Virus record (IMG/VR): IMGVR_UViG_3300032334_001259
Span: 274,436-338,435 of that record
DNA: 64,000 nucleotides
Reading direction: 5' to 3' (one strand)
Of this stretch, positions 29,630-55,552 are shown piece by piece. Below the pieces are notes generated by a model, which saw only the letters and a list, made by a program, of their open reading frames with translations, did not search any database and was not told where the DNA came from. A program made the translations under genes and the position numbers. Position 1 is the first letter of the stretch. Each line of letters begins with the position of its first letter.

Positions 29630-31675
29630 TTACTTGGTGCTGGTTCTGTAAACAGTATCCCAACCAGCGCCTGGTGGGTTTGCAGCCATTTCTTCACAAC
29701 GTTCAATCCACATATCATAATATCCATCCATTTGCCCGTCAAATTGACCTTTAATTTTTTTACAAATTTCTATTGCACTTGTAAATCTTTGAGCACGATA
29801 GTCATCCATCATGTGTTTATGATTAGTTTTAGCAGCAAGATATGCAATTCTATCACTGCGTTGTTCTAATACTGTAAAGATATCAACACCTTCTTTTTTA
29901 CCTTTAACCGCAATGCAGTCTAATTCAAGTGTAAAGTAATCATCTTTTACATATTCATTTGTCTTTGGTCCAATAACCATAGCAACATGATATGGTTTAC
30001 TTTGCCCTTCTAAACGTGAAGCAAGATTAACGCCATCACCAAGACAAGTATAATCAAATCGCTGGCTACTACCCATGTTACCAACGACGACAGTAGCAGT
30101 GTTGATACCAAGTCCCATTCCAAAAGGTGGGACTCCCTCTTTGGCAACTTCTTCATTAAACGCATTTAAACTTCCTAACATTTGTAGTGCTGTCTTTACA
30201 GCGTTCTTGGCATGATCTGCATCATCAAGTGGTGCGTTCCAAAATGCCATTTGTGCATCACCGATATATTTGTCAAGTGTGCCTTCATTCTCTAATATCT
30301 TAGCAGTCATCGCTGTCATATAGCGGTTCATTATTTTGGTAAGACCTTGAACGTCACTACCGTAATGCTCAGAAATGCTAGTAAAACCCCTAACATCGGT
30401 AAATATAATTGATAACTCACGTGACTCTCCTCCCAATGCTAATAGTTCTGGATTCTTTTGAAGTTTTTCAACCATTGCAGGTGAAAGATAAGTTCCAAAT
30501 TGTTTCTTTATTTGTTGCTTTTGTAAGAACTCACTGACGAACTTAACACCGTAGGCATGCAAAGCGACCAAGATGATTCCAGCAACAGGAGCGGTTGCGT
30601 CCCATAACTGTAAAGCGTGATTAAACTGATAGAAAGAAAAAGCAATACTGCCGCCGACCAATACAATAACCGAACCAAGCCCAACATATACCCACCTCGT
30701 CAAGAATAATAATAACAGTCCACCAATTACGAGTGCAATAAGTTCTGCACCTTCTGCATAACTTGGACGTTCAATGTTAACCTTATTTGCCAACGTAGCA
30801 ATAATCTTTGCTTGTATATCTTGTGGATATACTGCACCAACAGCAGTAGGAACAGGGTTTGCAATACCAGCAGCACTAACACCAACAATAACAATTGCGC
30901 CATCAAACTTTTCTGGCATATTTGTAACGCTTACTTGTTTGTGTTGTTGACTTAAATCAATCCATACACGACCTAAACTATCAGTTGTGAATATATTTTT
31001 ACCAATACCAAGTTTATCAATTCCAAGTTCATTTAACTTAACTTTCATATTCTTTTCATTATAAAGAACACGAAGTGTTTCAAGACCGATTGTAGGATAA
31101 AGTTTACCACCACTGCCAACAAGCAGCGGAATACGACGATTAACACCATCTATTTCAGGAAATACGTTTGTTGTTCCAACACCAATTGCACTATTTTCTA
31201 AATCTGGAATGTTGGCAATAACACCAGGATAATTGTAAATTCTATCAATAAAATTACTGTTGACAATGGCGGCACCATTTGGGCGTGGTGTGTTCTTGCC
31301 TACGCTACTTGGAATATTACTTAAAATTACTGGATGATTTTTAAGAGTTTCAGCAAGTGCAGCGTCACCACCTTGGCGGTCTGCTTCTGGCATTAACACT
31401 GTCCAAACAACAATGCTTGCACCACGTGCATAAATGTCGTTAATTATATCCGCATATATCTGTCTATTAAACGGCCATTGTCCATACTTGTTAAGTGCGG
31501 CTTCATCAATATTAACTGTATAAATTGGGTTTTCAGTTTGTGTTTTATTTGTGATAAGTTGGTCAAAGTATTTTAACTTGACGCTTTCAACAAATGTAGG
31601 TGATGAAACTTTTATGGCAACTACGATTGCCAATGTTATGAGTGCAGTCCATGGGCTTAATAGAATTTTTTTCAT
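29630..31675 (-). CDS. CHASE2-domain class III adenylate/guanylate cyclase
   Basis: IDEAAL..GQWPFNR and DGVNRRIPL (CHASE2); 3 TM; FTDVRGFT, DKYIGDAQMAFWNAP, GNMGS..RFDYT..GDGVNLASRLEG, VKGK. Confidence 0.93.
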   Translation of the reverse strand: MKKILLSPWTALITLAIVVAIKVSSPTFVESVKLKYFDQLITNKTQTENPIYTVNIDEAALNKYGQWPFNRQIYADIINDIYARGASIVVWTVLMPEADRQGGDAALAETLKNHPVILSNIPSSVGKNTPRPNGAAIVNSNFIDRIYNYPGVIANIPDLENSAIGVGTTNVFPEIDGVNRRIPLLVGSGGKLYPTIGLETLRVLYNEKNMKVKLNELGIDKLGIGKNIFTTDSLGRVWIDLSQQHKQVSVTNMPEKFDGAIVIVGVSAAGIANPVPTAVGAVYPQDIQAKIIATLANKVNIERPSYAEGAELIALVIGGLLLLFLTRWVYVGLGSVIVLVGGSIAFSFYQFNHALQLWDATAPVAGIILVALHAYGVKFVSEFLQKQQIKKQFGTYLSPAMVEKLQKNPELLALGGESRELSIIFTDVRGFTSISEHYGSDVQGLTKIMNRYMTAMTAKILENEGTLDKYIGDAQMAFWNAPLDDADHAKNAVKTALQMLGSLNAFNEEVAKEGVPPFGMGLGINTATVVVGNMGSSQRFDYTCLGDGVNLASRLEGQSKPYHVAMVIGPKTNEYVKDDYFTLELDCIAVKGKKEGVDIFTVLEQRSDRIAYLAAKTNHKHMMDDYRAQRFTSAIEICKKIKGQFDGQMDGYYDMWIERCEEMAANPPGAGWDTVYRTSTK

Positions 31676-31698
31676 GGTAATATTTACCCAAGAAAAAA

Positions 31699-31722
31699 CC
31701 CCGTAAATTTCTTTACGGGGTC
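31699..31722. terminator. intrinsic terminator-like hairpin
   Basis: ACCCCGTAAA-TTTC-TTTACGGGGT with U-tract on minus strand. Confidence 0.7.
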
Positions 31723-31730
31723 TTATTAAA

Positions 31731-33608
31731 TTAAAATTCAAAGACTTTTTCTAAATTATCAGAAATTAAAATACCATCTTCAATTTCTTTAACTTTTACT
31801 TTAAGTTGCTTTGTGCAGTCAGTTAAATCATAAATTAAACTATCCGCATGAGTAGTAAGTGAAACTGGGTGCAATGCCTTTTCAATTTCTTCTTGATCAT
31901 ACCCAATTCGTTTCTTTTTTGCCATTGAGTAAACCACCGCACGAGTAACTAACCATGCCATTTCATTAGATGCAATTTCTTTTGCTGCATCTTTTATTTT
32001 TTCAAATATTTCTTCTTCTCTGGTTTGATATTCTGCAACTAGTTCTTCTACTGCCTTATCTACAACTTCATACATGCAATTTACATAAATTGCCTGATCT
32101 TCAATATATTCTGCAGCACGATGTTCTAAACTTGTAGCACTTGCTTTTTCTAAATCATCTTCTGTTCTAATAAATTGAATTGCAGGCACTGTGGCGGCAA
32201 TTTGAAAATTACTGCCTGGCACATATGGAATTTGTTTTGTTTTAGGACTTTTTACAGCGTTGAAACTATTGCCAGCACCTTTTTTCTTACTAGGTGCCAA
32301 GAATCCTGTTTGCCCTTTATCTCTTGTTACGGTAACCATAAGTTCATCAAGTAATTGTTGTGCACGTTTAGTAATATCTTCACTACTGACATTTGATGGT
32401 GCATATTCTCTAATTTTTTCTTTAAACCATTCAGGCATATTTTCACGAATTTCACGTGCATATTCTAACATTTGAATTTCAGTTTTTTCAGCATTTGGTT
32501 TTAATATTTTTTGACGATACTGATCTGGTTGTACATTGCTTTCGTCTGGCAACTCAACAAAAATGCGAAAATATCTAGCACTGTATAAAACACCTAATGC
32601 ACCTGCAATCTTTTTCCATTTACTATCAGTTGCAACATCATAAATTTCATTTTTATAAACAAGACCACTAAAGGAAGCAACAGTAGCATAACCTAATGCA
32701 GTAGTAGTTGGTTTATCTTGGTTAGCATATCCTGAAAAACCACTTGGACCATCATAAACATACCAAATTTTTATACCACTTCCATTTTTGTCATTAACAA
32801 ATTCTTGAATAACCTTATCGGGTTTTGACATAGAAGTATGTGTAATATGTTCTAAAATTGTTAAGAATCGTATATTAAGATGTTTATGTTTTGAAAAACC
32901 AACTTCTAATCGCAAACTGACGGTATTTGGAATTCGGAAAAAACGACGATACATTTGATTGATTAACCATGCACTAGGTTTCTGTTCTTCACCATCATAG
33001 GGACGTTCAACCGTATTTTGATTAGGATTATTACCACAAAGCACAATTGCTGTCCAATCTTCATTGGTATCCCATGGTATTGTTGCAAGTCCAGTAATAT
33101 CCCAAACATCCTTATACCCAGTTGGACTTTCACCATCTGTTTCTACAAAATCATAACGGCAATAATTTGCTTGTCCTTTGCTATTAATTTCTTTTCGTAA
33201 AAGTGAAATGGAAACTTTCTTATTCTTACATGAAATCCAAATCATTCCTTCTTGATTTACACCCATTGCTGTAACTTTTGCGCCGATACCAAAATTTTGA
33301 TCAAGGCGTTGAATTTTGTTGAGTGATGATGATAAATTAGTAACTTCTCGCAATTCTTTGGCAGACATACCAGTGCCATTATTCCAGAAAGTAAGTTTTT
33401 TTATATTAAAACCAAAATCACCAAAAACATTTTCGTTAAATCCAAAAACAGAAGGATCAGTTTCTAGTATTTGAATTTTTGGTTCTTTTGCTGTGATAGA
33501 TGCTTCAATGGAATTTTGAATTAATTCTCGTATCATCATTTCACTTGGGGCTTGTTCAATTGTACGAGTAATAAGATAAGACGTATTTGTAACGTTTAAT
33601 GCAGTCAT
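31731..33608 (-). CDS. GHKL (Hsp90/MORC-like) ATPase domain protein
   Basis: IRELIQNSIEA, NNGTGMS, FGIGAK, WTAIVL. Confidence 0.8.
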   Translation of the reverse strand: MTALNVTNTSYLITRTIEQAPSEMMIRELIQNSIEASITAKEPKIQILETDPSVFGFNENVFGDFGFNIKKLTFWNNGTGMSAKELREVTNLSSSLNKIQRLDQNFGIGAKVTAMGVNQEGMIWISCKNKKVSISLLRKEINSKGQANYCRYDFVETDGESPTGYKDVWDITGLATIPWDTNEDWTAIVLCGNNPNQNTVERPYDGEEQKPSAWLINQMYRRFFRIPNTVSLRLEVGFSKHKHLNIRFLTILEHITHTSMSKPDKVIQEFVNDKNGSGIKIWYVYDGPSGFSGYANQDKPTTTALGYATVASFSGLVYKNEIYDVATDSKWKKIAGALGVLYSARYFRIFVELPDESNVQPDQYRQKILKPNAEKTEIQMLEYAREIRENMPEWFKEKIREYAPSNVSSEDITKRAQQLLDELMVTVTRDKGQTGFLAPSKKKGAGNSFNAVKSPKTKQIPYVPGSNFQIAATVPAIQFIRTEDDLEKASATSLEHRAAEYIEDQAIYVNCMYEVVDKAVEELVAEYQTREEEIFEKIKDAAKEIASNEMAWLVTRAVVYSMAKKKRIGYDQEEIEKALHPVSLTTHADSLIYDLTDCTKQLKVKVKEIEDGILISDNLEKVFEF

Positions 33609-33723
33609 AATGTTTTCCTTTTATAAGTTCTTAAAACTAACCAACTATGTGGTAACTATGTTTTAGGTAATAATACTTATTATACACACTCTGCATAAAA
33701 AAATAAAATTAATTTTTTTAAAA

Positions 33724-33857
33724 AAGTGCGGGTAGGATTTATACCTACAATTTGATGGTATTAACAAGCTACAGATTTAACAGACCCTTGCTTTCTAGTT
33801 CCTTTATTTCCATCATGCCGATACTCCAATACGTGTCCTGCCCACGCCGCCGCACTT
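33724..33857 (-). ncRNA. tRNA-like structured ncRNA A (134 nt, no anticodon arm)
   Basis: Terminal stem AAGTGCGG/CCGCACTT, D-like arm CGTG-GGCAGGA-CACG, T-like arm GTAGG-TATAAAT-CCTAC; own TTGACA-N17-TATAAA promoter; T-tract after. Confidence 0.7.
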
Positions 33858-33887
33858 ATCTCTTTATATATTATTGTATTAGTGCTG

Positions 33888-34889
33888 TCAATGTATTTGT
33901 TGTAAGTTTTTTAAAAAACTATTTGTGCATTTTTCCCAAGTATAATCTTTGCTTATTTTATGTACATTTTTGCGATTACAGTCTAGTGCATATTCAATGG
34001 CAATTTGTAAATTGTCATCCATAGCACCATTTACACCATTTATTATAATATCAGTTGGACCTGTAACTGGATATGCTGCAATTGGTGTTCCACATGCCAT
34101 TGCTTCTAACATTACCACACCAAAGGTATCAGTCTTACTTGGAAATACAAATACATCTGAGTTAGCATAATATTCAGCAAGTGCATCACCATGTTTATAA
34201 CCTGTAAAAATTACGTCGTTATATTTCTTTTTTAATTCTGCCAAGTATGGACCATCACCAACTAATATTTTTGTTCCGTCAGTTTTTAGACTGCAAAAAT
34301 CATCTAAACCTTTTTCTATGCTTGCACGACTTACGCAAAGTAATATAGGTTTAGTTGCTTGATTTGACTTACGTTTTTTGGGATTAAATATTTTAGTATC
34401 AACTCCACGATTCCATACAGCAAGACGTTCAAATCCACGTCCTTGTAATTCTTGTCGCATAGTTTCATTTGTAACTAAAACCCGTGTGCTAAACTTATGA
34501 AACCAACGAATAAACCAATAACCCCAATCTACGGGTATATTAAAATATTTGTTAAAGTATTCTGGAAATTTTGTATGATAACTTGTGTTATGTGGAATAC
34601 TGCGCTTATCTACTTTGCAATACCAACGTGCGGCAAATCCTAATGGACCCTCTGTAGCAATATGAATAGCATCTGGCTTAAACGATTCAATCATGGGACC
34701 AACACGCCAAATATTAAGTGTAAGTTTTATTTCTGGATAACCTGGCGCTGGCACAGTCTTAAATTGACTAGGTTCAATAACCTGAACTATATGTCCAAGT
34801 CGTTCTAACTCTGCAACAGTGTTTATAAGAGTTGTAACAACACCATTTACACTTGGTGCGTATGTATCAGTTACCAGTGAGATTCGCAT
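33888..34889 (-). CDS. GT4 glycosyltransferase
   Basis: TDTYAPSVNGVV, HIATEGPLG, RGVD, VFPSKTDTFGVVMLEAMACG. Confidence 0.92.
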   Translation of the reverse strand: MRISLVTDTYAPSVNGVVTTLINTVAELERLGHIVQVIEPSQFKTVPAPGYPEIKLTLNIWRVGPMIESFKPDAIHIATEGPLGFAARWYCKVDKRSIPHNTSYHTKFPEYFNKYFNIPVDWGYWFIRWFHKFSTRVLVTNETMRQELQGRGFERLAVWNRGVDTKIFNPKKRKSNQATKPILLCVSRASIEKGLDDFCSLKTDGTKILVGDGPYLAELKKKYNDVIFTGYKHGDALAEYYANSDVFVFPSKTDTFGVVMLEAMACGTPIAAYPVTGPTDIIINGVNGAMDDNLQIAIEYALDCNRKNVHKISKDYTWEKCTNSFLKNLQQIH

Positions 34890-35616
34890 TTTTATATTTA
34901 ATTATAAACCAATGACCATTATAATCTTCAACTAATGCTGTGCAACTTTCAACCCAATCACCGCAATTCATATATTTTATATCACCTATTTCACGTATAT
35001 TTGCGTGATGTATATGTCCGCATATAATTCCATTTGCACCACGTGTTCTCGCAAAACTAGCAAGATTATCTTCAAAATCACCAATAAAGTTTACTGCCTT
35101 TTTAACTTTATATTTTGCCCAAGCACTTAAACTCCAATATGGTAACTTAAATAAATTTCTAATTCTTGCTATAACAACATTTAATGCAATTGTTAAATCA
35201 TATGCCCAACTACCAATATGACTTAACCATTTCATATTTTTAATAACAACATCAAACTGGTCTCCATGCATAACAATATATTTTTTACCATCTAAGCTGG
35301 CATGTGTAATATTATCCACGAGACAAATATTACCAAAGCTATACTCTCCAAATGTTCGTAAAAATTCATCGTGATTTCCTGGCAAATAATAGACTTGAAC
35401 GCCTTTTCTTGCCAAACGCATAAGTTTTTGGATTACATCATTATGATGTTGCGGCCAGTAAAAACTTTTAGCCATTGCCCAACCATCAATTATGTCACCA
35501 ACAAGATACAGACGTTCACACTCAAAAGTTTTAATAAATTCAAGCAAATCATTTGCTTGACTCATACGAGTGCCTAAATGCACATCGCTTATAAAGACAC
35601 TACGATAATAATTCAT
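34867..35616 (-). CDS. LpxH-like (UDP-2,3-diacylglucosamine hydrolase family) metallophosphoesterase
   Basis: SDVHLG, GDIIDGW, PGNHD, HGDQFD, CGHIH, NCGDWVES. Confidence 0.88.
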   Translation of the reverse strand: MNYYRSVFISDVHLGTRMSQANDLLEFIKTFECERLYLVGDIIDGWAMAKSFYWPQHHNDVIQKLMRLARKGVQVYYLPGNHDEFLRTFGEYSFGNICLVDNITHASLDGKKYIVMHGDQFDVVIKNMKWLSHIGSWAYDLTIALNVVIARIRNLFKLPYWSLSAWAKYKVKKAVNFIGDFEDNLASFARTRGANGIICGHIHHANIREIGDIKYMNCGDWVESCTALVEDYNGHWFIIKYKNANLTGN

Positions 35617-35660
35617 ATAAAATATTTACCTGACCATTTATGTAAGTTTTATGATGCTTT

Positions 35661-36191
35661 TTAGTGTTTAGTATAAGAATAACCACTACAAGGAGGAGTT
35701 AAACATTGTATATTCATATTGCTACTATCTGGTGTATTAAGGTTATCTTGCACAACAGTTGCACCAATATCACTACCACTCAAATTAAGAACAAAACTTT
35801 TATTAGCATCGCCAGTTTGGGTAATACTTGCATTATTATTGTTGTTTTGTGTTGTAGCATCCAAATTAATGGCGGCAGTATGATTACCGCTACCATTTTG
35901 TAAAATAGTAAGTGTGTTGTTATTGTTATTTGAAGCATTTGTATTAGTATTGTAAGTCCCATCATAATTTTTTCCTACTGGTGGTGTTCCAATAAAAGCA
36001 AGATGATCTCCGCTTCCTTCTTGAACTATTGTATGATTATTACTATCGCCTTTGTTTAGTAGAATTGCTTCACTATTTCCACTTGAACTTTGGTCTAGGT
36101 AAAAAATATTTCCATTTCCAACTTGATCAATATAAACACTGCCTGCGTAACAAGGTGTGGTAATCATTAGTAAGAATAATAATTTTTTCAT
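35661..36191 (-). CDS. secreted curlin-like repeat protein
   Basis: Signal peptide; VYIDQVGNGN, QEGSGDH, QNGSGNH, QTGDAN repeats. Confidence 0.7.
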   Translation of the reverse strand: MKKLLFLLMITTPCYAGSVYIDQVGNGNIFYLDQSSSGNSEAILLNKGDSNNHTIVQEGSGDHLAFIGTPPVGKNYDGTYNTNTNASNNNNNTLTILQNGSGNHTAAINLDATTQNNNNNASITQTGDANKSFVLNLSGSDIGATVVQDNLNTPDSSNMNIQCLTPPCSGYSYTKH

Positions 36192-37306
36192 TGTGATTGT
36201 GCAATCCTTATCAAGCTACCGCCAGCATGTTGAACATTTTGAATAAGTGTAGTTCCATCTTGTGTTAATTGTATAGTTGTTGCACTATCCTTATCAACTC
36301 CAATTTGGCTAAAACTATTTGCGCCAACACGATATAGCACAACGGTTTGGTCTTGTTTATAATATAATAAACCAGCAGCTTTATTAGGTTTATAATTTGG
36401 CAACATTTGATTTTCACCACCCAACATACTTTCAAGTAGTGCAGCATTTAGCAAGTCAAGTTGATTTACCAATAATACAGAATCAAGTTGGTTAATATCA
36501 AGTTTGTTGAATCCCATAAGATAATTCATATCAAGTTCATCAAACTTTAGAAAATCTTTATCAAGAAAATTAATATCAAGTGCAGTTTTTTGTGTTGTTT
36601 CATTTTCTGCTGATTTCTTTGGTGGGGTTAAAATTAACATATTATTAATTTGTTCTTGATTTAACACAAGTATAACGGGTTTAGTTGGATTCTGTTCTTT
36701 TGCACTTGTAGTTGTTGCTTGAAATGGTTTATCAAGATGAACTGTACCCATATCAGTAGTGACATCAATCTTTCCAGTAACACAATCTTTTTCAATATTT
36801 TTGTAACCTACAGGACAGCTTGGCAACAGAACTACAAGACTGCGACCTAATTCATCAACTGTCATACTAAAGTCAGTTCCACGAACACCAATGACAGCAG
36901 TTGGTGTTTCAATTTTAACTTGCTGTGGATTTTCTTTTGCTATTTGTCCACTGGCATAGGTTGCAGTTCCAATAGCAACTTTAATACCAAGTTTGCTTGC
37001 ACTTGCATTATTTGGATCATATACAAAGTCATCAATTACAAGTTTACTTTGTTCAGTGATTTGCACTTTGGTATCATCTTCGAAAGTAATACCTACACGT
37101 GCACGAGCGGTGACAACGGCATCATTCATTTCAACGCCGCTGTTCACCGCACTTGGTATACTTTCTTTATCTCGTTGAATTTCAGTTGGTCCAGTTTGTT
37201 CAGTTACTTTACCAACAGCCGCCCAACAATCAGTTACTGCTGTTAACAGTAATACTGTTGTTAGAACCGTTGCTCTTGATATCAACTTTACTATCGATTG
37301 TGCCAC
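36188..37306 (-). CDS. FecR-domain periplasmic protein
   Basis: FEDDTKVQI..QSKLVIDDFVYDP, IETPTAVIGVRGTDF. Confidence 0.85.
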   Translation of the reverse strand: MAQSIVKLISRATVLTTVLLLTAVTDCWAAVGKVTEQTGPTEIQRDKESIPSAVNSGVEMNDAVVTARARVGITFEDDTKVQITEQSKLVIDDFVYDPNNASASKLGIKVAIGTATYASGQIAKENPQQVKIETPTAVIGVRGTDFSMTVDELGRSLVVLLPSCPVGYKNIEKDCVTGKIDVTTDMGTVHLDKPFQATTTSAKEQNPTKPVILVLNQEQINNMLILTPPKKSAENETTQKTALDINFLDKDFLKFDELDMNYLMGFNKLDINQLDSVLLVNQLDLLNAALLESMLGGENQMLPNYKPNKAAGLLYYKQDQTVVLYRVGANSFSQIGVDKDSATTIQLTQDGTTLIQNVQHAGGSLIRIAQSQ

Positions 37307-37916
37307 CTTGTGTCACTCCAACGTTATTTGAACTACCTGTTACATCAACTTTTGCATCAAAACCAGTAGCGCCAGCAGGACCACTTTGTTGAACGCTTAC
37401 TACATTACTGTCACCAGTTGCTTTAATATCAGCCTTTGCACCTAACATATTAGTAGTGCTACTGTTGATACTTGCATTATTATTGTCACCAGTTACAGCA
37501 ATACCCATAGTGCTTTTTGCACTTGCAGTCACACTTAATGTATTTCCACTACCAGTTGCGTTTGCAGTAATGCTTGTATCAGTACAAGTTGTTGTTGGTG
37601 CGGCACCGCAAGCAACATTCACAGTGTTGCTATCACCAGTTACAGTGCTGTTTAAACTACTACTTGCACCTTGCATATTAACATTATGTGTATTTTGGCT
37701 TCCTACTTGATCAATGCTTACAGTTTGCGTATTACCATTAAAAGTGGCACGAGTCGTGTCATTACCGACTTCATTACCACTACCTGTTTGAGTGATGCCG
37801 ATAGTGCTTCCACTACCAACTTGGTCGATATACACGTTATTGGTTGTACCTGCAAACACATTGCTTGCATACAGCAACCCAACAGCCATTAATGCTGTTC
37901 TTAATACCTTATTCAA
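37230..37916 (-). CDS. secreted curlin-like repeat protein (CsgA/B-like)
   Basis: Signal peptide; repeated (Q/T)xGxxN units; AGGAG SD. Confidence 0.75.
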   Translation of the reverse strand: MNKVLRTALMAVGLLYASNVFAGTTNNVYIDQVGSGSTIGITQTGSGNEVGNDTTRATFNGNTQTVSIDQVGSQNTHNVNMQGASSSLNSTVTGDSNTVNVACGAAPTTTCTDTSITANATGSGNTLSVTASAKSTMGIAVTGDNNNASINSSTTNMLGAKADIKATGDSNVVSVQQSGPAGATGFDAKVDVTGSSNNVGVTQGGTIDSKVDIKSNGSNNSITVNSSN

Positions 37917-37941
37917 ATGCCTACTCCTTTAGGAGTATTGC

Positions 37942-38751
37942 TTACTTTTTATCGGAAGCAAAACCCCATAAACCTTTATTTGCACCCTGTTTGATCATAT
38001 CCACAACGGCTGCTTCTGTTGCCAGACGCACAGCATATGTGGTGGGTTCGTTGACATTTGCACCTGCTTCTAATTGAATACTCATAGTTCCTTGGTCAAG
38101 AAATGTTAGTGCATTTCCATTTCCACCAGTGCTTAAAATAGTTTTTGTGGCACCAGCACTTACAAGGACTTCACCTGTATGAACACTGATTAATCGTAAA
38201 ACAACTGTGACTACATCAGTTCTATATTGTTGACTTATTCCAATACCTAACATGGCAGCTCCTGCACCACCACTTTGAACATTCGTATCGTAACCTACGA
38301 TACCACCTTCTACCATTACACCAGCAATAAGCATTGGTGATAATGGTTTTGCATCTTTACCTTCATAAGTTTCACGTTGATTACGAATAAGTTGACGTTC
38401 TTTAATAAGATCATCTAAACCCACACGTTCTACAACTTGAAACCATTTACCACGACCAGCATCTTGCAATGCTTTAATTAAAAATACTTCACCACCTTGT
38501 GTTACTGCACTGCTTAATACACTAAATTTGTCATTTTCTTTACGTTGTCCAGTCTTATCATTAAAACCATACATGGCAATAGTGATAGGTGGACCCGCTG
38601 GTGGTGGCATACTTGATAATTCATTATATGTACTTTTTTTAATTATTTGTGGCATGGGCGTAGCCTTTTCAGGAACCTTTGCCTCATATGGTATGGTTGT
38701 ATTACAACCAGCTAACATCATTGCCATAATTGAAAATACTATCTTACGCAT
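37942..38751 (-). CDS. csgG: curli secretion channel CsgG
   Basis: Lipobox LAGC; F.DKTGQRK, AVTQGG, WFQVVERVGL..L.KERQLIR, GGIVGYDTN..SGG.GA. Confidence 0.93.
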   Translation of the reverse strand: MRKIVFSIMAMMLAGCNTTIPYEAKVPEKATPMPQIIKKSTYNELSSMPPPAGPPITIAMYGFNDKTGQRKENDKFSVLSSAVTQGGEVFLIKALQDAGRGKWFQVVERVGLDDLIKERQLIRNQRETYEGKDAKPLSPMLIAGVMVEGGIVGYDTNVQSGGAGAAMLGIGISQQYRTDVVTVVLRLISVHTGEVLVSAGATKTILSTGGNGNALTFLDQGTMSIQLEAGANVNEPTTYAVRLATEAAVVDMIKQGANKGLWGFASDKK

Positions 38752-39200
38752 TAGAACTTGAAACTCCCTATTGGAACTGTGACATCAGTCCGATTACCAG
38801 TAGCATCAATGACAGTAAGAGTAATAGTTTGGTTAACAGTATCTTTTAACCATGTTAAAGTGCTACCCTCAAACTGCATTGTACCAGTGGTTGCCCCATC
38901 AGCAAACATAGCATTGCTTAATTGCAAACTTAATTGTGCATAGATACGGCTTTCCAGATTGTTGAGAAACTTATTTAAATTTGTGTTATTTGCCTTTGAT
39001 TCAGCTGCTTCTTTTGCAGCTTTTTCTTCTGCTTCACGTGCTTTACGACGAGTGTATTCTTCATTTTCAATAGTCAGTGCATGACTACTGTAACCATCGC
39101 CGCTAAACTCTGGATTTTTAAAACCAAAAACCATTCCACTTGCAAAGACAGGTGTAGAAAACATCATTCCAGTGATGAAAAAAGGCACAATTTTACGCAT
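38751..39200 (-). CDS. csgF: curli assembly protein CsgF
   Basis: Signal peptide then MVFGFKNPEFSG; LESRIYAQLS; adjacent to csgG. Confidence 0.8.
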   Translation of the reverse strand: MRKIVPFFITGMMFSTPVFASGMVFGFKNPEFSGDGYSSHALTIENEEYTRRKAREAEEKAAKEAAESKANNTNLNKFLNNLESRIYAQLSLQLSNAMFADGATTGTMQFEGSTLTWLKDTVNQTITLTVIDATGNRTDVTVPIGSFKF

Positions 39201-39243: not shown

Positions 39244-39774
39244 TTAAGACAATTTCTTTATAGGTCTGCGAAATTCAACTATTGATGCTACAGGATATGC
39301 GCTTATGTTAACACTGTCGTCTTGGTTTCCACCAAGAAGTTGAACATACTTTATACCATTATCAAATGTCCAACCATAAAAGAAAGCGACATGGCGACCA
39401 CTTCCACCGCTACGGCGCATTAAGACAATATCGCCTGGTTGGGGGTCTGTAACTTTTATTCCGTAGTTATGATAACTTGCTGCACTTAAATTACCAGTGG
39501 AATCATAACCAGCACGTTCTAATACATAGTTTATAAAACCAGCACACCAAGGAATTTTTACAGGATCAATATCTAATATGGCTTGTAATTCTTTACGATT
39601 CTTTTTTGCATCATAACCATTATAATTCATGGCTATTTGCATTATATCACCACGTGTTTCACCAAATGTTAAACCATTGGAGTCCCAATTAAATGGAATC
39701 GTTAATTCAAATGCGCTTGCACTATTGAAAGGTATTAGACAAATACCAATTATTGCTAATAATCTTTTCATCAT
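39244..39774 (-). CDS. NlpC/P60-CHAP (TIGR02594-like) peptidoglycan hydrolase
   Basis: PWCAGF, PGDIV, HVAF, LGGNQ. Confidence 0.85.
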   Translation of the reverse strand: MMKRLLAIIGICLIPFNSASAFELTIPFNWDSNGLTFGETRGDIMQIAMNYNGYDAKKNRKELQAILDIDPVKIPWCAGFINYVLERAGYDSTGNLSAASYHNYGIKVTDPQPGDIVLMRRSGGSGRHVAFFYGWTFDNGIKYVQLLGGNQDDSVNISAYPVASIVEFRRPIKKLS

Positions 39775-39793
39775 ATATTTATTTTAGGCTGGC

Positions 39794-39869
39794 TGGCTGG
39801 GGAGCCAGGGATCGAACCTGGAATCTCTTGAGTCAAAGTCAAGCGTGTTGCCAATTCCACCACTCCCCA
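39794..39869 (-). tRNA. tRNA-Gln(TTG)
   Basis: TGGGGAG acceptor (U1-A72), CTTGA-CTTTGAC-TCAAG, GGTTCGATCCC, GCCA. Confidence 0.93.
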
Positions 39870-39947: not shown

Positions 39948-40982
39948 ATGTCAAAGAACGTTCTTATTACTGGCGGCGCAGGATTTATTGCACACCATGT
40001 TATTGATCATATCCTTAAAACTACAGATTGGAATATTGTCAGTCTTGACCGCTTGGACTTTAGCGGTAACCTAAATCGTCTGCATGATATGATGCAAGAT
40101 CATGATCCACAAACACAAAAACGTGTAAAGGTAATATTTCATGATCTCAAAGCAGAAATTAACCCTCTTACTAAAACTCGTATCGGTCCTGTTGATATTA
40201 TTCTTCACTTGGCCGCTGGTTCTCACGTTGATCGTAGTATTGATTACCCTATGGAGTTCGTTCTTGATAATGTTGTTGGAACTTGTAATATTCTTGAATT
40301 TGCTCGTAAATGTGATAATTTAGAACGTTTTGTATATTTCTCAACTGATGAAGTATTTGGTCCTGCACCGCATGGCGTAAACTATGGTGAGTATGATCGC
40401 TATAACAGCGGTAATCCATATAGTGCTACCAAGGCTGGCGGTGAAGAATTAGCAGTATGTTATGAAAACACTTATGGTCTTCCAGTTTATGTGACACATA
40501 CCATGAACGTATTTGGTGAGCGTCAGCATCCAGAGAAGTTTATTCCTATGTGTATCCGCAAAGCTCGTGATGGTGAAACTATTACAGTTCATAGTGATAG
40601 AACTCGCACTATTCCTGGTTCACGTCACTATATTCATGCCAAGGATGTTGCCAGTGCACTTATGTTTATTCTTGGTCTTAAGGATTTTGTAATGCCACCA
40701 GAGTTTGGTGGTGCAAAATGTCCAAAGTTCAACATTGTAGGTAAACAGGAAATCAATAACCTAGAACTAGCACAGATTATTGCCGATAGTCAAGGCAAAC
40801 CCCTTAACTATGAAATGGTTGACTTCCATAGCAGCCGTCCTGGTCATGATCTTCGTTACGCACTTAGCGGTGAGTTTATGAAGAACCTTGGTTGGGAACC
40901 TACTATTGAACTTACAGAACGTATTAAACAAGTTGTAGATTGGACCCTTGCTCGTCCAGATTGGTTGAACTTAGATGTCTAA
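39948..40982 (+). CDS. rfbB: dTDP-glucose 4,6-dehydratase
   Basis: TGGAGFI, AAGSHVDRSI, STDEVFG, PYSATK, QHPEKFIP, RPGHDLRY. Confidence 0.9.
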   Translation: MSKNVLITGGAGFIAHHVIDHILKTTDWNIVSLDRLDFSGNLNRLHDMMQDHDPQTQKRVKVIFHDLKAEINPLTKTRIGPVDIILHLAAGSHVDRSIDYPMEFVLDNVVGTCNILEFARKCDNLERFVYFSTDEVFGPAPHGVNYGEYDRYNSGNPYSATKAGGEELAVCYENTYGLPVYVTHTMNVFGERQHPEKFIPMCIRKARDGETITVHSDRTRTIPGSRHYIHAKDVASALMFILGLKDFVMPPEFGGAKCPKFNIVGKQEINNLELAQIIADSQGKPLNYEMVDFHSSRPGHDLRYALSGEFMKNLGWEPTIELTERIKQVVDWTLARPDWLNLDV

Positions 40983-45526: not shown

Positions 45527-46618
45527 TTAGAAAAGATCAACAGTTTCCCATGGCAATCCATCCTTACCAAAGTGACCATAGTTTGTAGTAGAACTATAGA
45601 TAGGACGGAACAGGTCAAACTTATTGATAATACCAAGTGGTGTTAGATCAACATTATCACGTATCCATTTTGTCAAACCACGACTATCGCCATTGCTTTC
45701 AACATAGAAACTCATTGGTTGTTCAAGACCAATAGCATAAGATACCTGAACTGTTGCCCAATCTGCACGACCACTTGCTACAATATTCTTGGCAAGATAA
45801 CGCATCATATAAGCTGCAGAACGGTCAACCTTTGTAGGGTCTTTACCACTAAATGCACCACCACCATGTGGAGCATAACCACCATAAGTATCAACAATAA
45901 TCTTACGACCAGTTAGACCAGTATCACCATCTGGACCACCAATAACAAAGCGTCCAGTAGGATTGATATGAAACTCTGTGCGAGTATCAACTAAGCGGTC
46001 AGGAAGAACACTACGAATAAGTTGTTCTACTCGTGTGCGAACCGCATACATATCAGTATCTTCACTGTGTTGCGTGGAACAAACTACCTTGTCAATACGA
46101 TAAGGAAGATTATCATCATTGTATTCAACAGTAATTTGGCTTTTGGCATCTGGACCAAGCCAATCACGACCGCTTTTACGATGTTCAGCAAGTGCCTTTA
46201 CAACTTCATGGCTGTAATGAATAGCACTTGGCATGAAGTTTGGTGTTTCATTAGAAGCATAACCAAACATTAAGCCTTGGTCACCAGCACCAAATGTATC
46301 AGTGCCAAGTGCAATATCAGCACTTTGTCCATGCATTAGATTAAGAATATTGACCGTGCGCCAATTAAATCCATTTTGCTCGTAACCAATATCTTTAATA
46401 GTATTGATAACAGCGGCATCAACTAATTGTGGATCAAGTTCGCCTTTATATTCACCTGCGATTACCACTTGATTAGTAGTAACAAGTGTTTCACACGCAC
46501 ACCGATAAGATTTATCCTGTGGTGCCATCATCAAATCCAGAATCGCATCACTGATTGCATCAGCGACCTTATCTGGATGTCCTTCACTTACGCTTTCACT
46601 AGTAAACAGATAACTCAT
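45527..46618 (-). CDS. metK: S-adenosylmethionine synthetase
   Basis: FTSESVSEGHPDK, GAGDQG, GGGAFSGKDPTKVDRS, YGHFG. Confidence 0.97.
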   Translation of the reverse strand: MSYLFTSESVSEGHPDKVADAISDAILDLMMAPQDKSYRCACETLVTTNQVVIAGEYKGELDPQLVDAAVINTIKDIGYEQNGFNWRTVNILNLMHGQSADIALGTDTFGAGDQGLMFGYASNETPNFMPSAIHYSHEVVKALAEHRKSGRDWLGPDAKSQITVEYNDDNLPYRIDKVVCSTQHSEDTDMYAVRTRVEQLIRSVLPDRLVDTRTEFHINPTGRFVIGGPDGDTGLTGRKIIVDTYGGYAPHGGGAFSGKDPTKVDRSAAYMMRYLAKNIVASGRADWATVQVSYAIGLEQPMSFYVESNGDSRGLTKWIRDNVDLTPLGIINKFDLFRPIYSSTTNYGHFGKDGLPWETVDLF

Positions 46619-48081: not shown

Positions 48082-48648
48082 TCAAGAGAAAATTTCAGGG
48101 TATAAACTAGCAATATGGAATTGTTGGTCAGAATTAATATAATTTCTTATATGAGGAATTATATTGTTTGCCATTATTTCGTGCCCACGAGGACTAAAGT
48201 GATTTAGTCTTTTATCATTGTTTTTGTAATCCCATGTAGGATCATCAGCTTTACTGCAAATCATTAATCCACCAGGTGCAAGAAACCACAGACCATAATC
48301 TTTATCTAAAAAACCATGTTCAAAACAAGGAATATTAATCATTTTAATATTTCTTATTTTACATTGTTCTTGCATATCTTTGATTAGTAATCGTTGAATA
48401 GTTTTAGCAAATTCAATATCAGCCAATCCTTCATTATACAATCTTGTAAATTCAGTATGGCATACTATTATAACATCTGGTTGTGGGACTAAAGTTTTAA
48501 TAAAATTATCATAAATTTTATACTGACTTTGTCCTCTAAATCCATAACAACTTATCATTTCAAGATTAAGTTCATTACATACTCGTTCTATCCAAGTGTT
48601 TTTGTAACTGTATGTAAAACTATCACCTGTAATTAATATACGCATCAA
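48082..48648 (-). CDS. SGNH/GDSL-like protein
   Basis: TGDSF, GQSQ, NHFSPRGH. Confidence 0.65.
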   Translation of the reverse strand: MMRILITGDSFTYSYKNTWIERVCNELNLEMISCYGFRGQSQYKIYDNFIKTLVPQPDVIIVCHTEFTRLYNEGLADIEFAKTIQRLLIKDMQEQCKIRNIKMINIPCFEHGFLDKDYGLWFLAPGGLMICSKADDPTWDYKNNDKRLNHFSPRGHEIMANNIIPHIRNYINSDQQFHIASLYPEIFS

Positions 48649-55493: not shown

Positions 55494-55552
55494 TTTGTTT
55501 CTCCTTCTAAAAGCGAGTAAGTTAGACGACCCAACTTTGGCATCGTCTAACC
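55494..55552 (-). promoter_or_regulatory. ROSE-like RNA thermometer in hsp20 5' UTR
   Basis: 5' hairpin, then CUCGCUU-UUAG-AAGGAG: U(U/C)GCU pairs SD with bulged G. Confidence 0.7.

What the first reader, a model, noticed from the sequence alone, without database searches (positions are those of the whole stretch)
29630..39200. Phage-encoded trans-envelope system: CsgF/CsgG, curlin-like proteins, FecR and CHASE2 adenylate cyclase
Seen, on one strand: csgF-csgG-curlin-FecR-curlin, then LpxH-like and GT4, ncRNA A, GHKL ATPase and an intact CHASE2 cyclase (DKYIGD Lys suggests ATP). Established: CsgG/F form the curli pore; curli-type genes have been noted in some SAR11 myophages; FecR domains relay outer-membrane signals; CHASE2 cyclases sense periplasmic cues. 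No csgE was recognised. Inference: this is less a biofilm operon than an outer-membrane-to-cAMP relay, letting the infected cell sense outside events such as superinfection and adjust the lytic programme. The mechanism appears undescribed as far as I can tell.
Basis: partly seen in the sequence, partly recalled or inferred. Interest (0 to 1): 0.82.

Follow-up and report, generated by a model that had tools for sequence, protein, structure and literature searches.

The report
Phage curli pore plus cAMP sensor
A freshwater phage carries the already published phage "curli" secretion cluster joined to a FecR-type periplasmic protein and a membrane-sensor adenylate cyclase; the genes are real and tightly linked across phages, but what the cluster does in an infected cell is still untested.

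Summary
The order is csgF, csgG, curlin, FecR, curlin, LpxH-like, GT4, a structured RNA, a GHKL ATPase and a CHASE2 class III cyclase with all six catalytic residues (Lys/Thr, so ATP).

The core six-gene cassette is not new. It sits in Pelagibacter phage HTVC008M and Methylophilales phage Melnitz. Wittmers et al. 2022 described phage T8SS plus FecR plus adenylate cyclase.

In 104 viral loci surveyed here, FecR follows the first curlin in 74 of 74 informative loci. A cyclase lies within about 8 kb in 31 of 32 loci with full flanks.

What I add:
- FecR plus CHASE2-cyclase is a widespread bacterial module. It is adjacent in 51 of 75 loci retrieved through FecR alone, often with a Crp-like regulator and a TPR/barrel protein, and never with curli genes.
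- In Sinorhizobium meliloti the gene upstream of cyaK encodes a FecR-TPR-barrel protein that fits NsrA. NsrA is the outer-membrane receptor shown experimentally to signal to CHASE2 cyclases.

So an outer-membrane-to-cAMP relay has a real precedent. Its link to CsgG or the curlins, and to superinfection, remains inference. LpxH-like/GT4, GHKL and the RNA are variable cargo in an insertion hot spot. This is a new member of a known kind.

The parts
39794..39869 (-). tRNA-Gln(ttg). It lies just downstream of the best sigma-70-like match of the region (39909-39881) and upstream of the cassette.
   Evidence: ARAGORN; Rfam tRNA, 65.6 bits; promoter scan. The promoter count in that scan was not above shuffles.
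39244..39774 (-). Secreted CHAP / TIGR02594-family peptidoglycan hydrolase, 44 bp upstream of csgF. It may be an accessory that opens the cell wall, or a lysis enzyme.
   Evidence: Pfam CHAP E 9e-7; NCBIfam TIGR02594 at 92 bits against a cut-off of 70.6. N-terminal signal peptide. The only other distinct locus with a CHAP-model hit is L165, where it lies about 1.3 kb upstream of csgF.
38751..39200 (-). CsgF homologue with a signal peptide. The motif F-G-F-K-N-P-E-F follows directly after the predicted cleavage site.
   Evidence: PF10614 E 8e-13; phrog_35372 E 1e-48. The strict motif is kept in 5 of 12 CsgFs inspected, and relaxed variants (Y/Q/E-F-K/S-N/S-P-x-F) occur in the others.
37942..38751 (-). 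CsgG outer-membrane lipoprotein channel. It has a lipobox (L-A-G-C).
   Evidence: PF03783 E 5e-45. E. coli CsgG structures 3x2r/6l7a at E 6e-45 over residues 2-265. 52% identity to HTVC008M CsgG.
37230..37916 (-). Curlin-repeat protein 1: a secreted protein predicted to be an all-beta solenoid.
   Evidence: Curlin_rpt E 9e-7. Signal peptide and x-Q-x-G-x-x-N repeats. AlphaFold2 pLDDT 86, pTM 0.80, 17 regular strands.
36188..37306 (-). Periplasmic FecR-domain protein. It consists of a signal peptide, a FecR beta-domain (about residues 30-200), a low-confidence Leu/Asp-repeat linker (about 220-300) and a small C-terminal beta-domain. It has no anti-sigma domain.
   Evidence: PF04773 E 1e-9; phrog_37870 E 2e-90. 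AF2 pLDDT 78. Foldseek hits to PupR (6ovk) and BDI_1681 (4m0n) periplasmic domains at E 3e-4. Present in 74 of 74 informative viral loci.
35661..36191 (-). Curlin-repeat protein 2, a secreted protein. Its size varies widely between phages (about 90 to 480 aa).
   Evidence: Curlin_rpt E 4e-7. Signal peptide and five Q-x-G-x-x-N repeats. Size range.
34867..35616 (-). LpxH-like metallophosphoesterase: cargo, not core. It is not an LpxH orthologue by score. It may be a PlcP-type phospholipase C.
   Evidence: Metallophos E 7e-14. NCBIfam LpxH at 59 bits against a cut-off of 134. It overlaps the GT4 gene by 23 nt. It recurs in 9 of 71 viral loci, at different positions. It is absent beside bacterial FecR-CHASE2 modules.
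33888..34889 (-). GT4 glycosyltransferase: cargo. Its best named relatives are membrane glycolipid synthases.
   Evidence: Glycos_transf_1 E 3e-23 and Glyco_transf_4 E 2e-22. NCBIfam best hits are GlcNAc-phosphatidylglycerol synthase and monoglucosyl-diacylglycerol synthase, both below cut-off.
33723..33866 (-). It has an acceptor-type stem, a D-arm-like hairpin, a branched central arm and a T-arm-like hairpin, and is followed by a T run.
   Evidence: Conserved against unrelated flanks. The covariance model finds it in L014 and L119, which were not used to build it (E 3e-17 and 2e-21). Five pairs show compensatory change. No Rfam family matches. ARAGORN calls it only at a relaxed threshold.
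31731..33608 (-). GHKL (MORC/HATPase_c_3-type) protein of 625 aa: cargo, directly upstream of the cyclase. Asn replaces the adenine-binding Asp of the G1 box (W-N-N-G-x-G-M).
   Evidence: PF13589 E 6e-6. Atlas neighbours are HATPase_c_3 'ATP-binding proteins' of bacteria and phages. Its only relative in IMG/VR is L119 at 47% identity, where it is again next to the cyclase. Motif.
29630..31741 (-). CHASE2 class IIIb adenylate cyclase. Layout: TM1, periplasmic CHASE2 (about 48-330), three TM helices (about 330-405), catalytic domain (441-617) and an 80-aa tail. The likely true start is Met23, at 31675.
   Evidence: CHASE2 E 4e-37 and Guanylate_cyc E 2e-18. Hydropathy. D449, K491, D495, T565, N572 and R576 are conserved. 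The best PDB relatives are CyaB-type adenylate cyclases. 32% identity over 87% of its length to S. meliloti CyaK, E 1e-65.

Best explanation
The region is a phage-borne envelope cassette made of two joined modules, plus unrelated cargo.

Module 1 is a type VIII (curli) secretion set. It comprises the lipoprotein channel CsgG, its partner CsgF and two Sec-exported curlin-repeat proteins. In the infected cell it most likely puts amyloid-type fibres on the surface.

Module 2 is the viral copy of a widespread bacterial signalling pair. A periplasmic FecR-domain protein acts on the periplasmic CHASE2 domain of an inner-membrane class III adenylate cyclase. A cue from the periplasm or outer membrane is thereby turned into cAMP. 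The phage region encodes no cAMP receptor, so the cAMP would be read by a Crp-type protein of the host.

The FecR gene sits between the two curlin genes, and the whole set is inherited together. I therefore infer that the cue is the state of the secretion system or of its fibres, so that fibre export and cAMP are coupled.

Shown here: the genes, their export signals, an intact cyclase active site, the linkage across phages, and the bacterial FecR-CHASE2 pairing. Inferred: that FecR regulates the cyclase in the phage, what the cue is, which way the coupling runs, and what cAMP changes.

LpxH-like plus GT4, the tRNA-like RNA and the GHKL protein are cargo dropped into an insertion hot spot between curlin 2 and the cyclase.
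For: Domains and export signals.

Secretion module:
- CsgG matches solved E. coli CsgG at E 6e-45.
- CsgF keeps an N-terminal F-x-F-x-N-P-x-F-type motif directly after its signal peptide (strict form in 5 of 12 CsgFs inspected).
- Curlin 1 models as a regular all-beta solenoid, pLDDT 86.

Cyclase:
- All six class III catalytic residues are kept, with Lys/Thr specificity residues. They are conserved in 119 plus 20 homologues.
- The nearest solved relatives are adenylate cyclases.

Linkage in phages:
- The same gene order occurs in HTVC008M and Melnitz.
- Of 104 distinct viral loci, FecR is present in 74 of 74 informative ones and a cyclase in 31 of 32 with full flanks.
- Both genes are retained when the cassette is rearranged (L119) or interrupted by 0.2 to 5.6 kb of cargo.

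Bacterial pairing:
- 75 loci were retrieved through FecR similarity alone. In 51 a CHASE2-cyclase gene lies within 600 bp, and in 59 within 10 kb.
- None of the 75 has csgG, csgF or curlin.
- Recurrent neighbours are a Crp-like cNMP-binding regulator (35 loci) and a TPR/porin-like protein (36 loci).

Experimental precedent:
- S. meliloti cyaK is preceded by a 1190-aa FecR+TPR+barrel gene. This fits NsrA, the outer-membrane receptor required for activation of CyaK/CyaD1/D2 and Clr (PMC7529298, PMC13001267).
- The phage FecR domain folds like the periplasmic domain of PupR and related anti-sigma factors, which binds an outer-membrane protein's signalling domain.
Against: - There is no experiment on any phage copy.
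- The phage FecR protein lacks the TPR and barrel parts of NsrA, and is only about 26% identical to it over about 100 residues.
- In S. meliloti the stand-alone FecR protein SMc02177 was not needed for signal perception (PMC5498481).
- No Crp-like or other cNMP-binding ORF was found in the window or in the phage loci fetched up to that point, L001-L036. Whether the unknown host has one is untested.
- All the phage loci descend from one ancestral cassette, so conserved order partly reflects shared ancestry rather than independent selection.
- One locus (L016) has the T8SS, FecR and curlin 2 but no cyclase within 6 kb. Wittmers et al. report that the cyclase is often missing in podophages.
- Melnitz cultures showed no clumping (PMC9004378).
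Confidence: 0.45

Rival explanations
1. This is a plain curli operon used for aggregation or shielding: 'sibling capture' of neighbouring host cells, or a fibre coat that blocks competing phages. FecR and the cyclase act only as transcriptional regulators of that operon, through cAMP and a host regulator. This is the proposal of Zaragoza-Solas 2020 and Wittmers 2022.
For: CsgG, CsgF and two secreted curlin-repeat proteins are all present and look functional. Published interpretation: PMC7029224, PMC9599517.
Against: - No clumping was seen in Melnitz-infected cultures (PMC9004378).
- FecR here has no anti-sigma or DNA-binding part. Its bacterial relatives pair with CHASE2 sensors rather than with iron uptake or csgD.
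- The phage cassette encodes no transcription factor.
Confidence: 0.25
2. CsgG/CsgF serve as a pore rather than a fibre exporter. The pore would be either a gated channel that times lysis (pinholin or secretin-like; Buchholz 2022) or an uptake channel for larger molecules (Zaragoza-Solas 2020). The cyclase and FecR are bystanders.
For: - No csgE gate is present (PMC9599517).
- The residues aligned to the E. coli CsgG constriction loop differ (alignment).
- A secreted CHAP-type wall hydrolase lies directly upstream.
Against: - Two curlin-repeat substrates with signal peptides are conserved next to the pore in essentially every locus. A simple pore would not need them.
- An outer-membrane pore does not depolarise the inner membrane.
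- CsgF keeps the motif expected for the secretion complex.
Confidence: 0.1
3. The cassette is chiefly an outer-membrane-to-cAMP relay that lets the infected cell detect outside events such as superinfection, and retune the lytic programme.
For: - The NsrA to CHASE2-cyclase to cAMP precedent (PMC7529298).
- The strict FecR-cyclase linkage in phages.
- In S. meliloti the signal is a ribosomal protein released from cells (PMC7529298). This shows that such relays can report cell damage nearby.
Against: - No evidence ties CsgG, CsgF or the curlins to signal input.
- There is no phage-encoded cAMP receptor or cAMP-responsive lysis gene in the window.
- The curlins look like ordinary fibre subunits.
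- Nothing points to superinfection as the cue.
Confidence: 0.1
4. The cyclase is a host-takeover enzyme that floods the cell with cAMP to reprogram metabolism, independently of the secretion genes. The linkage only reflects joint transfer within a hypervariable island.
For: - The junction before the cyclase is an insertion hot spot with unrelated cargo.
- Some loci have the cyclase on the other strand, or have two copies (L146, L148, L152, L154).
- The island around the cassette holds other auxiliary genes: MetK, a carbamoyltransferase and a sugar epimerase.
Against: - A takeover enzyme would not need a periplasmic CHASE2 sensor, nor a FecR partner, which is present in 74 of 74 informative phage loci and adjacent to a CHASE2 cyclase in 51 of 75 bacterial loci.
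- The cyclase stays within about 6 kb of FecR in 31 of 32 loci, despite heavy turnover of everything in between.
Confidence: 0.15

Closest known systems
Pelagiphage / methylophage T8SS (curli) cluster with FecR and adenylate cyclase (Zaragoza-Solas 2020, PMC7029224; Buchholz 2022, PMC9004378; Wittmers 2022, PMC9599517)
   Same: It has the same six genes in the same order: csgF, csgG, curlin, FecR, curlin, cyclase. Proteins are 35-52% identical to those of HTVC008M and Melnitz. csgE and csgD are absent. It lies in a hypervariable island.
   Different: - It comes from lake metagenomes, on a 338-kb contig. The published freshwater pelagimyophages were reported to lack curli genes.
- About 4 kb of cargo (LpxH-like, GT4, tRNA-like RNA, GHKL) is inserted before the cyclase.
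- The published main texts do not mention the CHASE2 sensor (for Wittmers 2022; searches show 'cyclase' and 'FecR' absent from the other two). Wittmers 2022 reads FecR as an iron regulator.
Sinorhizobium meliloti NsrA - CyaK/CyaD1/CyaD2 - Clr cAMP cascade
   Same: - Both have a CHASE2 class III cyclase. The window protein is 32% identical to CyaK over 87% of its length.
- In both, a FecR-domain gene lies immediately upstream of the cyclase.
- The experimentally shown flow is outer membrane to CHASE2 cyclase to cAMP (PMC7529298, PMC13001267).
   Different: - NsrA carries its own TPR and outer-membrane barrel. The phage FecR protein has neither.
- The phage has no Clr/Crp gene nearby.
- The outer-membrane proteins encoded next to the phage module are CsgG/CsgF, which are unrelated to NsrA.
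Bacterial FecR + CHASE2 sensor gene pairs (Campylobacterota cAMP clusters, PMC9239204; Burkholderia LysM-FecR + CHASE2 histidine kinase 'BiofilmReg' operon, PMC5192318)
   Same: A secreted FecR-domain protein is encoded next to a CHASE2 transmembrane sensor. Here this holds in 51 of 75 loci, with Crp-like and TPR neighbours.
   Different: None of the 75 bacterial loci has csgG, csgF or curlins. Bacterial FecR partners are longer (about 450 aa or more) and have different C-terminal parts. Some bacterial pairs output through a kinase rather than a cyclase.
Escherichia coli curli system (csgBAC / csgDEFG)
   Same: It shares the CsgG lipoprotein channel (E 6e-45 to solved CsgG), CsgF, and secreted subunits with curlin repeats.
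   Different: There is no CsgE, CsgD or CsgC. Subunits are longer and divergent, scoring far below the CsgA/CsgB equivalog cut-offs. The residues aligned to the constriction loop differ. All genes lie on one strand, with the signalling genes interleaved.
FecA-FecR-FecI / PupB-PupR cell-surface signalling
   Same: The FecR-domain fold matches the periplasmic domain of PupR, which binds the signalling domain of an outer-membrane transducer.
   Different: No cytoplasmic anti-sigma domain, ECF sigma factor or TonB-dependent transducer was seen among the cassette and flank ORFs scanned. The output would be cAMP rather than sigma-factor release.

Membership tests
Curli / type VIII secretion system | CsgG outer-membrane lipoprotein channel | tested here: met
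   PF03783 E 5e-45. Lipobox present. Matches solved E. coli CsgG at E 6e-45.
Curli / type VIII secretion system | CsgF partner with an N-terminal segment that enters the CsgG barrel | tested here: met
   PF10614 E 8e-13. F-x-F-x-N-P-x-F-type motif after the signal peptide (strict form in 5 of 12 CsgFs inspected). The likeness of this motif to E. coli CsgF rests on my recollection, because phmmer found no PDB CsgF.
Curli / type VIII secretion system | Secreted subunits built of curlin repeats (CsgA/CsgB type) | tested here: met
   Curlin_rpt E 9e-7 and 4e-7, above Pfam cut-off. Signal peptides present. Beta-solenoid-type model. Scores are far below the NCBIfam CsgA/CsgB equivalog cut-offs, so these are not orthologues of CsgA/B.
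Curli / type VIII secretion system | CsgE periplasmic gate/adaptor and CsgD regulator | tested here: not met
   No cassette ORF matches CsgE or CsgD in Pfam or NCBIfam. Wittmers 2022 reports the same absence.
Phage T8SS-FecR-cyclase cassette (HTVC008M / Melnitz type) | Gene order csgF-csgG-curlin-FecR-(curlin)-cyclase, with homologous proteins | tested here: met
   tblastn and annotated records. HMM maps of 104 viral loci.
CHASE2 class III adenylate cyclase | Periplasmic CHASE2 domain between transmembrane helices | tested here: met
   PF05226 E 4e-37. Hydrophobic segments at about 25-47 and 330-405. Topology is predicted, not measured.
CHASE2 class III adenylate cyclase | Two metal Asp residues, Lys plus Thr/Asp substrate pair, and transition-state Asn and Arg | tested here: met
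   D449, D495, K491, T565, N572 and R576 are present and conserved.
CHASE2 class III adenylate cyclase | cAMP synthesis activity | not testable with these tools
   Needs an enzyme assay or cya complementation.
FecR-type anti-sigma cell-surface signalling | FecR periplasmic domain | tested here: met
   PF04773 E 1e-9. Fold match to PupR and BDI_1681 at E 3e-4.
FecR-type anti-sigma cell-surface signalling | Cytoplasmic anti-sigma domain, cognate ECF sigma factor and TonB-dependent transducer | tested here: not met
   The protein begins with a signal peptide or anchor and has no N-terminal cytoplasmic domain. No sigma factor or TonB-dependent receptor was seen among the cassette and flank ORFs scanned.
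Bacterial FecR / CHASE2-cyclase / Crp module (NsrA-CyaK-Clr type) | FecR-domain gene linked to a CHASE2 cyclase gene | tested here: met
   Phage. Bacteria: 51 of 75 adjacent. S. meliloti cyaK locus.
Bacterial FecR / CHASE2-cyclase / Crp module (NsrA-CyaK-Clr type) | Crp-like cNMP-binding regulator encoded nearby | tested here: not met
   A profile built from 36 bacterial neighbours finds nothing in the window or in the phage loci fetched up to that point (L001-L036), even at E of 10 or less.
Bacterial FecR / CHASE2-cyclase / Crp module (NsrA-CyaK-Clr type) | TPR / outer-membrane barrel partner, either as a separate gene or fused as in NsrA | tested here: not met
   No homologue of the TPR/porin-like family occurs in the window or in phage loci L001-L036. 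The phage FecR protein has no TPR or barrel.
LpxH (lipid A UDP-2,3-diacylglucosamine diphosphatase) | Score at or above the equivalog cut-off | tested here: not met
   59 bits against a cut-off of 134 (NF003743), and 51 against 190 (TIGR01854).
PlcP-Agt lipid-remodelling pair | Metallophosphoesterase phospholipase C followed by an Agt-type GT4 glycolipid synthase | tested here: inconclusive
   Adjacent, overlapping genes of the right families. Fusions of the two domains exist in Verrucomicrobiota. The plcP-agt operon is documented (PMC4796936). No verified PlcP or Agt sequence was available to compare.

The most novel reading that the evidence does not exclude
The phage has rebuilt the bacterial NsrA-type trans-envelope sensor by swapping its outer-membrane barrel for a curli secretion pore. 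CsgG/CsgF, or the fibres they export, act as the surface antenna. The stand-alone FecR protein couples them to the CHASE2 cyclase. The resulting cAMP lets the infected cell register events at its surface, such as neighbouring lysis, competing phage or contact with other cells, and alter the course of infection.
Probability: 0.15. Interest if true: 0.8.

Novelty: new member of a known kind. Interest (0 to 1): 0.4.

Why it matters
Phage curli clusters are abundant. Wittmers et al. put them at about 0.1% of assembled ocean viral proteins, and more than 600 stretches matched in IMG/VR here. Their hosts lack curli genes, yet no function has been shown.

Recognising the FecR and cyclase genes as a copy of the NsrA/CyaK-type envelope-to-cAMP module changes the reading. 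FecR stops being an 'iron regulator' and becomes a sensor partner. That reading is directly testable: measure cAMP with and without the partners.

If it is right, it would be a clear case of a virus giving its host a new surface-sensing pathway. If it is wrong, the cassette is still a widespread, ordinary-looking fibre secretion set. This window adds a freshwater, large-genome member with extra cargo.

Tried and rejected
- **GHKL, LpxH-like and GT4 as parts of the system: rejected.** HTVC008M, Melnitz and most of the 104 loci lack them. GHKL occurs only in the window phage and L119. LpxH-like occurs in 9 of 71 loci, at varying positions.
- **LpxH-like as the cAMP phosphodiesterase of the module: no support.** No homologue lies beside any of the 75 bacterial FecR-CHASE2 modules. 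A phosphodiesterase role is not excluded biochemically.
- **The cyclase as a Pycsar-type defence cyclase: rejected.** The PADLOC PycC hits cover only the shared catalytic fold. The protein has a CHASE2 sensor and Lys/Thr (ATP) residues.
- **A phage-encoded cAMP receptor: none found** in the window or in phage loci L001-L036.
- **Bacterial ancestor with curli plus FecR plus CHASE2 together: none** among 75 loci.
- **Promoter and terminator scan: not informative.** It gave 48 sites against 43 expected. The T4 late-promoter motif TATAAATA is absent from the cassette and is not enriched in the window.
- **Rfam:** no family matches the intergenic RNA. The whole 279-nt gap folds no better than shuffles (z 0.07), although the roughly 140-nt core is conserved.
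- **RNA sequencing runs:** none was listed.
- **PDB sequence searches:** nothing for CsgF or GHKL.
- **Foldseek with the curlin model:** no significant match.
- **Virion genes in the window:** none found in two PHROG scans.
I re-ran it without those rows.

Full report
**The observation**

Between 29630 and 39200 every long ORF lies on the minus strand.

| Gene | Coordinates | Evidence |
|---|---|---|
| CsgF | 38751-39200 | E 8e-13 |
| CsgG | 37942-38751 | E 5e-45 |
| curlin-repeat protein 1 | 37230-37916 | E 9e-7 |
| FecR-domain protein | 36188-37306 | E 1e-9 |
| curlin-repeat protein 2 | 35661-36191 | E 4e-7 |
| LpxH-like metallophosphoesterase | 34867-35616 | Metallophos E 7e-14 |
| GT4 glycosyltransferase | 33888-34889 | Glycos_transf_1 E 3e-23 |
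| non-coding gap | 33609-33887 | 279 nt |
| HATPase_c_3 (GHKL) protein | 31731-33608 | E 6e-6 |
| CHASE2 plus class III cyclase | 29630-31741 | E 4e-37 and 2e-18 |

- Translations show signal peptides on CsgF, both curlins and the FecR protein. CsgG has a lipobox.
- The cyclase has one N-terminal and three central hydrophobic helices around the CHASE2 domain.
- CsgG aligns with solved E. coli CsgG over its whole length (E 6e-45).
- An F-x-F-x-N-P-x-F-type motif follows the CsgF signal peptide. The strict form is kept in 5 of 12 CsgFs inspected and relaxed variants occur in the others.
- Curlin 1 gives a confident all-beta, regularly repeated model (pLDDT 86). It has no significant PDB fold match.
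- The cyclase has D449, K491, D495, T565, N572 and R576. These six residues define an active class III adenylate cyclase with ATP specificity. They are conserved in 119 database homologues and 20 phage loci.
- The cyclase's nearest solved relatives are CyaB-type adenylate cyclases. Homologues begin at residue 22-23, so the true start is probably the ATG at 31675.

**Is it a phage?**

- The window matches, at 100%, a 338-kb IMG/VR contig and a 90-kb one.
- It has seven scattered tRNAs, a T4-type RNA ligase, auxiliary genes such as a carbamoyltransferase and MetK, and many ORFs without family.
- No virion gene lies in these 64 kb.
- The strongest argument is homology. The cassette is present in the cultured Pelagibacter phage HTVC008M and Methylophilales phage Melnitz.
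- Public runs that hold parts of the cassette are lake and other freshwater metagenomes.
- Close cyclase homologues sit on contigs of 318-375 kb. This is therefore probably a large freshwater phage.

**What is already known**

- Zaragoza-Solas et al. 2020 reported csgF/csgG clusters in pelagimyophages (PMC7029224).
- Buchholz et al. 2022 found them in Melnitz and proposed a lysis-timing pore (PMC9004378).
- Wittmers et al. 2022 described the full set in podo- and myo-pelagiphages: CsgF, CsgG, curlin-repeat proteins, FecR, an adenylate cyclase and a 'histidine kinase'. They showed that it is global and transcribed (PMC9599517).
- The cluster is therefore not undescribed.
- The main text of Wittmers 2022 never mentions CHASE2, and it reads FecR as an iron regulator. 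'Cyclase' and 'FecR' do not occur in the main texts of the other two papers.

**Linkage across phages**

I mapped the cassette proteins, using profiles built from them, on loci fetched from IMG/VR with CsgG as bait.

- There are 104 distinct loci.
- All 74 loci with at least 2.6 kb after csgG have FecR after the first curlin.
- Of 32 loci with about 8 kb on both sides, 31 have a CHASE2 cyclase. The median distance from FecR is 1.6 kb and the range is 3 bp to 5.6 kb.
- The exception is L016.
- The pair survives rearrangement. In L119 the cyclase is divergent from csgF-FecR. In L146 and L148 it is on the other strand. L152 and L154 have two cyclases.
- These loci share ancestry, so they are not independent events. 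Even so, both genes persist through heavy turnover of everything between them.

**The insert**

The junction between curlin 2 and the cyclase is an insertion hot spot.

- The gap ranges from about 220 bp to 5.6 kb.
- Its contents vary: LpxH-like plus GT4; a RimK-type ATP-grasp protein that is 84% identical between L119 and L008; the GHKL protein; and unassigned ORFs.
- HTVC008M and Melnitz have none of these.
- GHKL has only one relative in IMG/VR (L119, 47% identity), where it is again directly upstream of the cyclase. It carries Asn in place of the adenine-binding Asp. It is a MORC-type protein, not a histidine kinase.
- LpxH-like scores far below the LpxH cut-offs and overlaps the GT4 gene. 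It recurs in 9 of 71 loci, at different places.
- I read all of these as cargo, not as parts of a relay.

**The new point: FecR plus CHASE2 cyclase is a bacterial module**

I scanned one genome per bacterial species with an alignment of phage FecR proteins.

- Five full-length hits lie on short MAG contigs that carry the whole phage cassette. These are probably phage DNA binned into MAGs.
- The other 75 hits match only the FecR domain, at about 30% identity, in Beta- and Gammaproteobacteria, Campylobacterota and others.
- These loci were selected only through FecR. Even so, 51 have a gene matching both the CHASE2 and cyclase parts of the phage profile within 600 bp, and 59 have one within 10 kb.
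- None has csgG, csgF or curlin.
- Clustering the neighbours shows three recurrent partners:
  - a Crp-like cNMP-binding regulator in 35 loci;
  - a TPR protein with a weak porin-like C-terminus after the cyclase in 36 loci;
  - often a type I secretion set with an RTX-like protein.
- Mo et al. 2022 had noted CHASE2 cyclase, FecR, TPR and phosphodiesterase clusters in Campylobacterota (PMC9239204). A LysM-FecR plus CHASE2 kinase operon is known in Burkholderia (PMC5192318).

**An experimental precedent**

- The window cyclase aligns with S. meliloti CyaK at 32% identity over 87% of its length (E 1e-65).
- On pSymB the gene immediately upstream of cyaK, abutting it with a one-base overlap, encodes a 1190-aa protein. 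It has a FecR domain (66-160), TPRs (417-587) and a weak outer-membrane barrel match at the C-terminus.
- NsrA is described as having its barrel at residues 600-1200 (PMC7529298). This gene therefore very probably is nsrA. I could not check the locus tag, because Garnerone 2018 is not held.
- NsrA is the outer-membrane receptor required for CyaK and CyaD1/D2 to raise cAMP and activate Clr (PMC7529298, PMC13001267).
- A FecR gene (smc02177) is also among the Clr targets studied together with smc02178, although it was not needed for signal perception (PMC5498481).
- The AlphaFold model of the phage FecR protein (pLDDT 78) matches the periplasmic domains of PupR and a Parabacteroides anti-sigma factor (E 3e-4). 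Those domains bind an outer-membrane protein's signalling domain.

**How it most likely works**

- The cassette combines a fibre-secretion module with a FecR/CHASE2 envelope sensor that makes cAMP.
- The interleaved gene order and joint inheritance suggest that the sensor reports on the secretion system or its fibres. That step is inference.
- The phage FecR protein lacks NsrA's TPR and barrel.
- No Crp-like protein is encoded in the window or in the phage loci fetched up to that point, L001-L036. The output must therefore use a host receptor, or one encoded elsewhere in the large genome.
- I put 0.45 on this composite.

**The RNA**

- The gap holds an element of about 140 nt (33723-33866, minus strand). 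It has an acceptor-type stem, a D-arm-like hairpin, a branched middle and a T-arm-like hairpin before a T run.
- It is conserved in L008-L012, where it sits elsewhere in the cassette amid unrelated flanks.
- A covariance model finds it in L014 and L119, which were not used to build the model.
- Rfam has no match.
- ARAGORN calls it only at a relaxed threshold, as an intron-bearing tRNA.
- No RNA run was listed.
- It is real and conserved, but its function is unknown.

**Verdict**

The relay idea has a good bacterial precedent, but its wiring to the curli parts and to superinfection is not shown. The claim that the cluster is undescribed does not hold.
- This is a new freshwater, cargo-bearing member of a published phage cassette.

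Noticed in passing
window 33723-33866 (-); also L008 14118-14262, L010 13866-14015, L014 14078-14234, L119 8121-8276: A conserved tRNA-like RNA of about 140 nt, with an acceptor-type stem, D- and T-arm-like hairpins and a branched middle. It matches no Rfam family. It always lies inside the variable part of the cassette, but at different positions.
   Followed up: partly
window 33888-35616 (-): The LpxH-like metallophosphoesterase overlaps a GT4 glycosyltransferase whose best named relatives are glycolipid synthases. The pair resembles the PlcP-Agt lipid-remodelling operon that replaces phospholipids with glycolipids under phosphate stress. It recurs in several phage cassettes, and fused versions exist in Verrucomicrobiota.
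   Followed up: partly
window 31731-33608 (-); L119 9499-11469: The GHKL/MORC-type protein has Asn in place of the adenine-binding Asp (W-N-N-G-x-G-M) in both known copies. In two differently arranged cassettes it sits directly upstream of the cyclase. It might be the 'histidine kinase' of the published podophage clusters; I did not test this.
   Followed up: partly
window 39244-39869 (-): A secreted CHAP/TIGR02594 wall hydrolase and a tRNA-Gln lie directly upstream of csgF, behind the best sigma-70-like match of the region (39909-39881).
   Followed up: no
L008 16655-17539, L010, L014, L119 8486-9370: A RimK-type ATP-grasp ligase (294 aa) occupies the slot before the cyclase in related phages. 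It is 84% identical between L119 and L008. The window lacks it.
   Followed up: partly
L037-L041 (MAG contigs labelled Pelagibacter, Flavobacteriaceae, Rhodobacteraceae, Pirellulales, Legionellales): Short contigs in bacterial MAGs carry the phage cassette: complete in L039 and L041, cut at a contig end or frame-broken in L037, L038 and L040. They are most likely phage DNA binned with bacterial genomes.
   Followed up: no
whole window; contig IMGVR_UViG_3300032334_001259: The window comes from a 338-kb viral contig. Its relatives sit on contigs of 286-375 kb and in lake metagenomes. This is a large freshwater phage lineage with curli genes, whereas published freshwater pelagimyophages were reported to lack them.
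   Followed up: partly
L152 and L154: Two loci carry two CHASE2 cyclase genes, one upstream of csgF and one downstream of FecR.
   Followed up: no
L197 3315-8836 (S. meliloti pSymB): The gene upstream of cyaK fuses, in one 1190-aa protein, the FecR domain and the TPR/barrel parts that are separate genes flanking the cyclase in many other bacteria.
   Followed up: partly
window 55488-55549 (-): An Rfam ROSE_3 thermoregulator match lies just at the gathering score (43.5 against 43), upstream of a small ORF. It may be chance.
   Followed up: no
window 45527-46618 (-), 48645-50108 (-), 39948-40982 (+): Auxiliary genes around the cassette: a SAM synthetase (MetK), a Nol-type carbamoyltransferase and an NAD-dependent sugar epimerase/dehydratase.
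   Followed up: no
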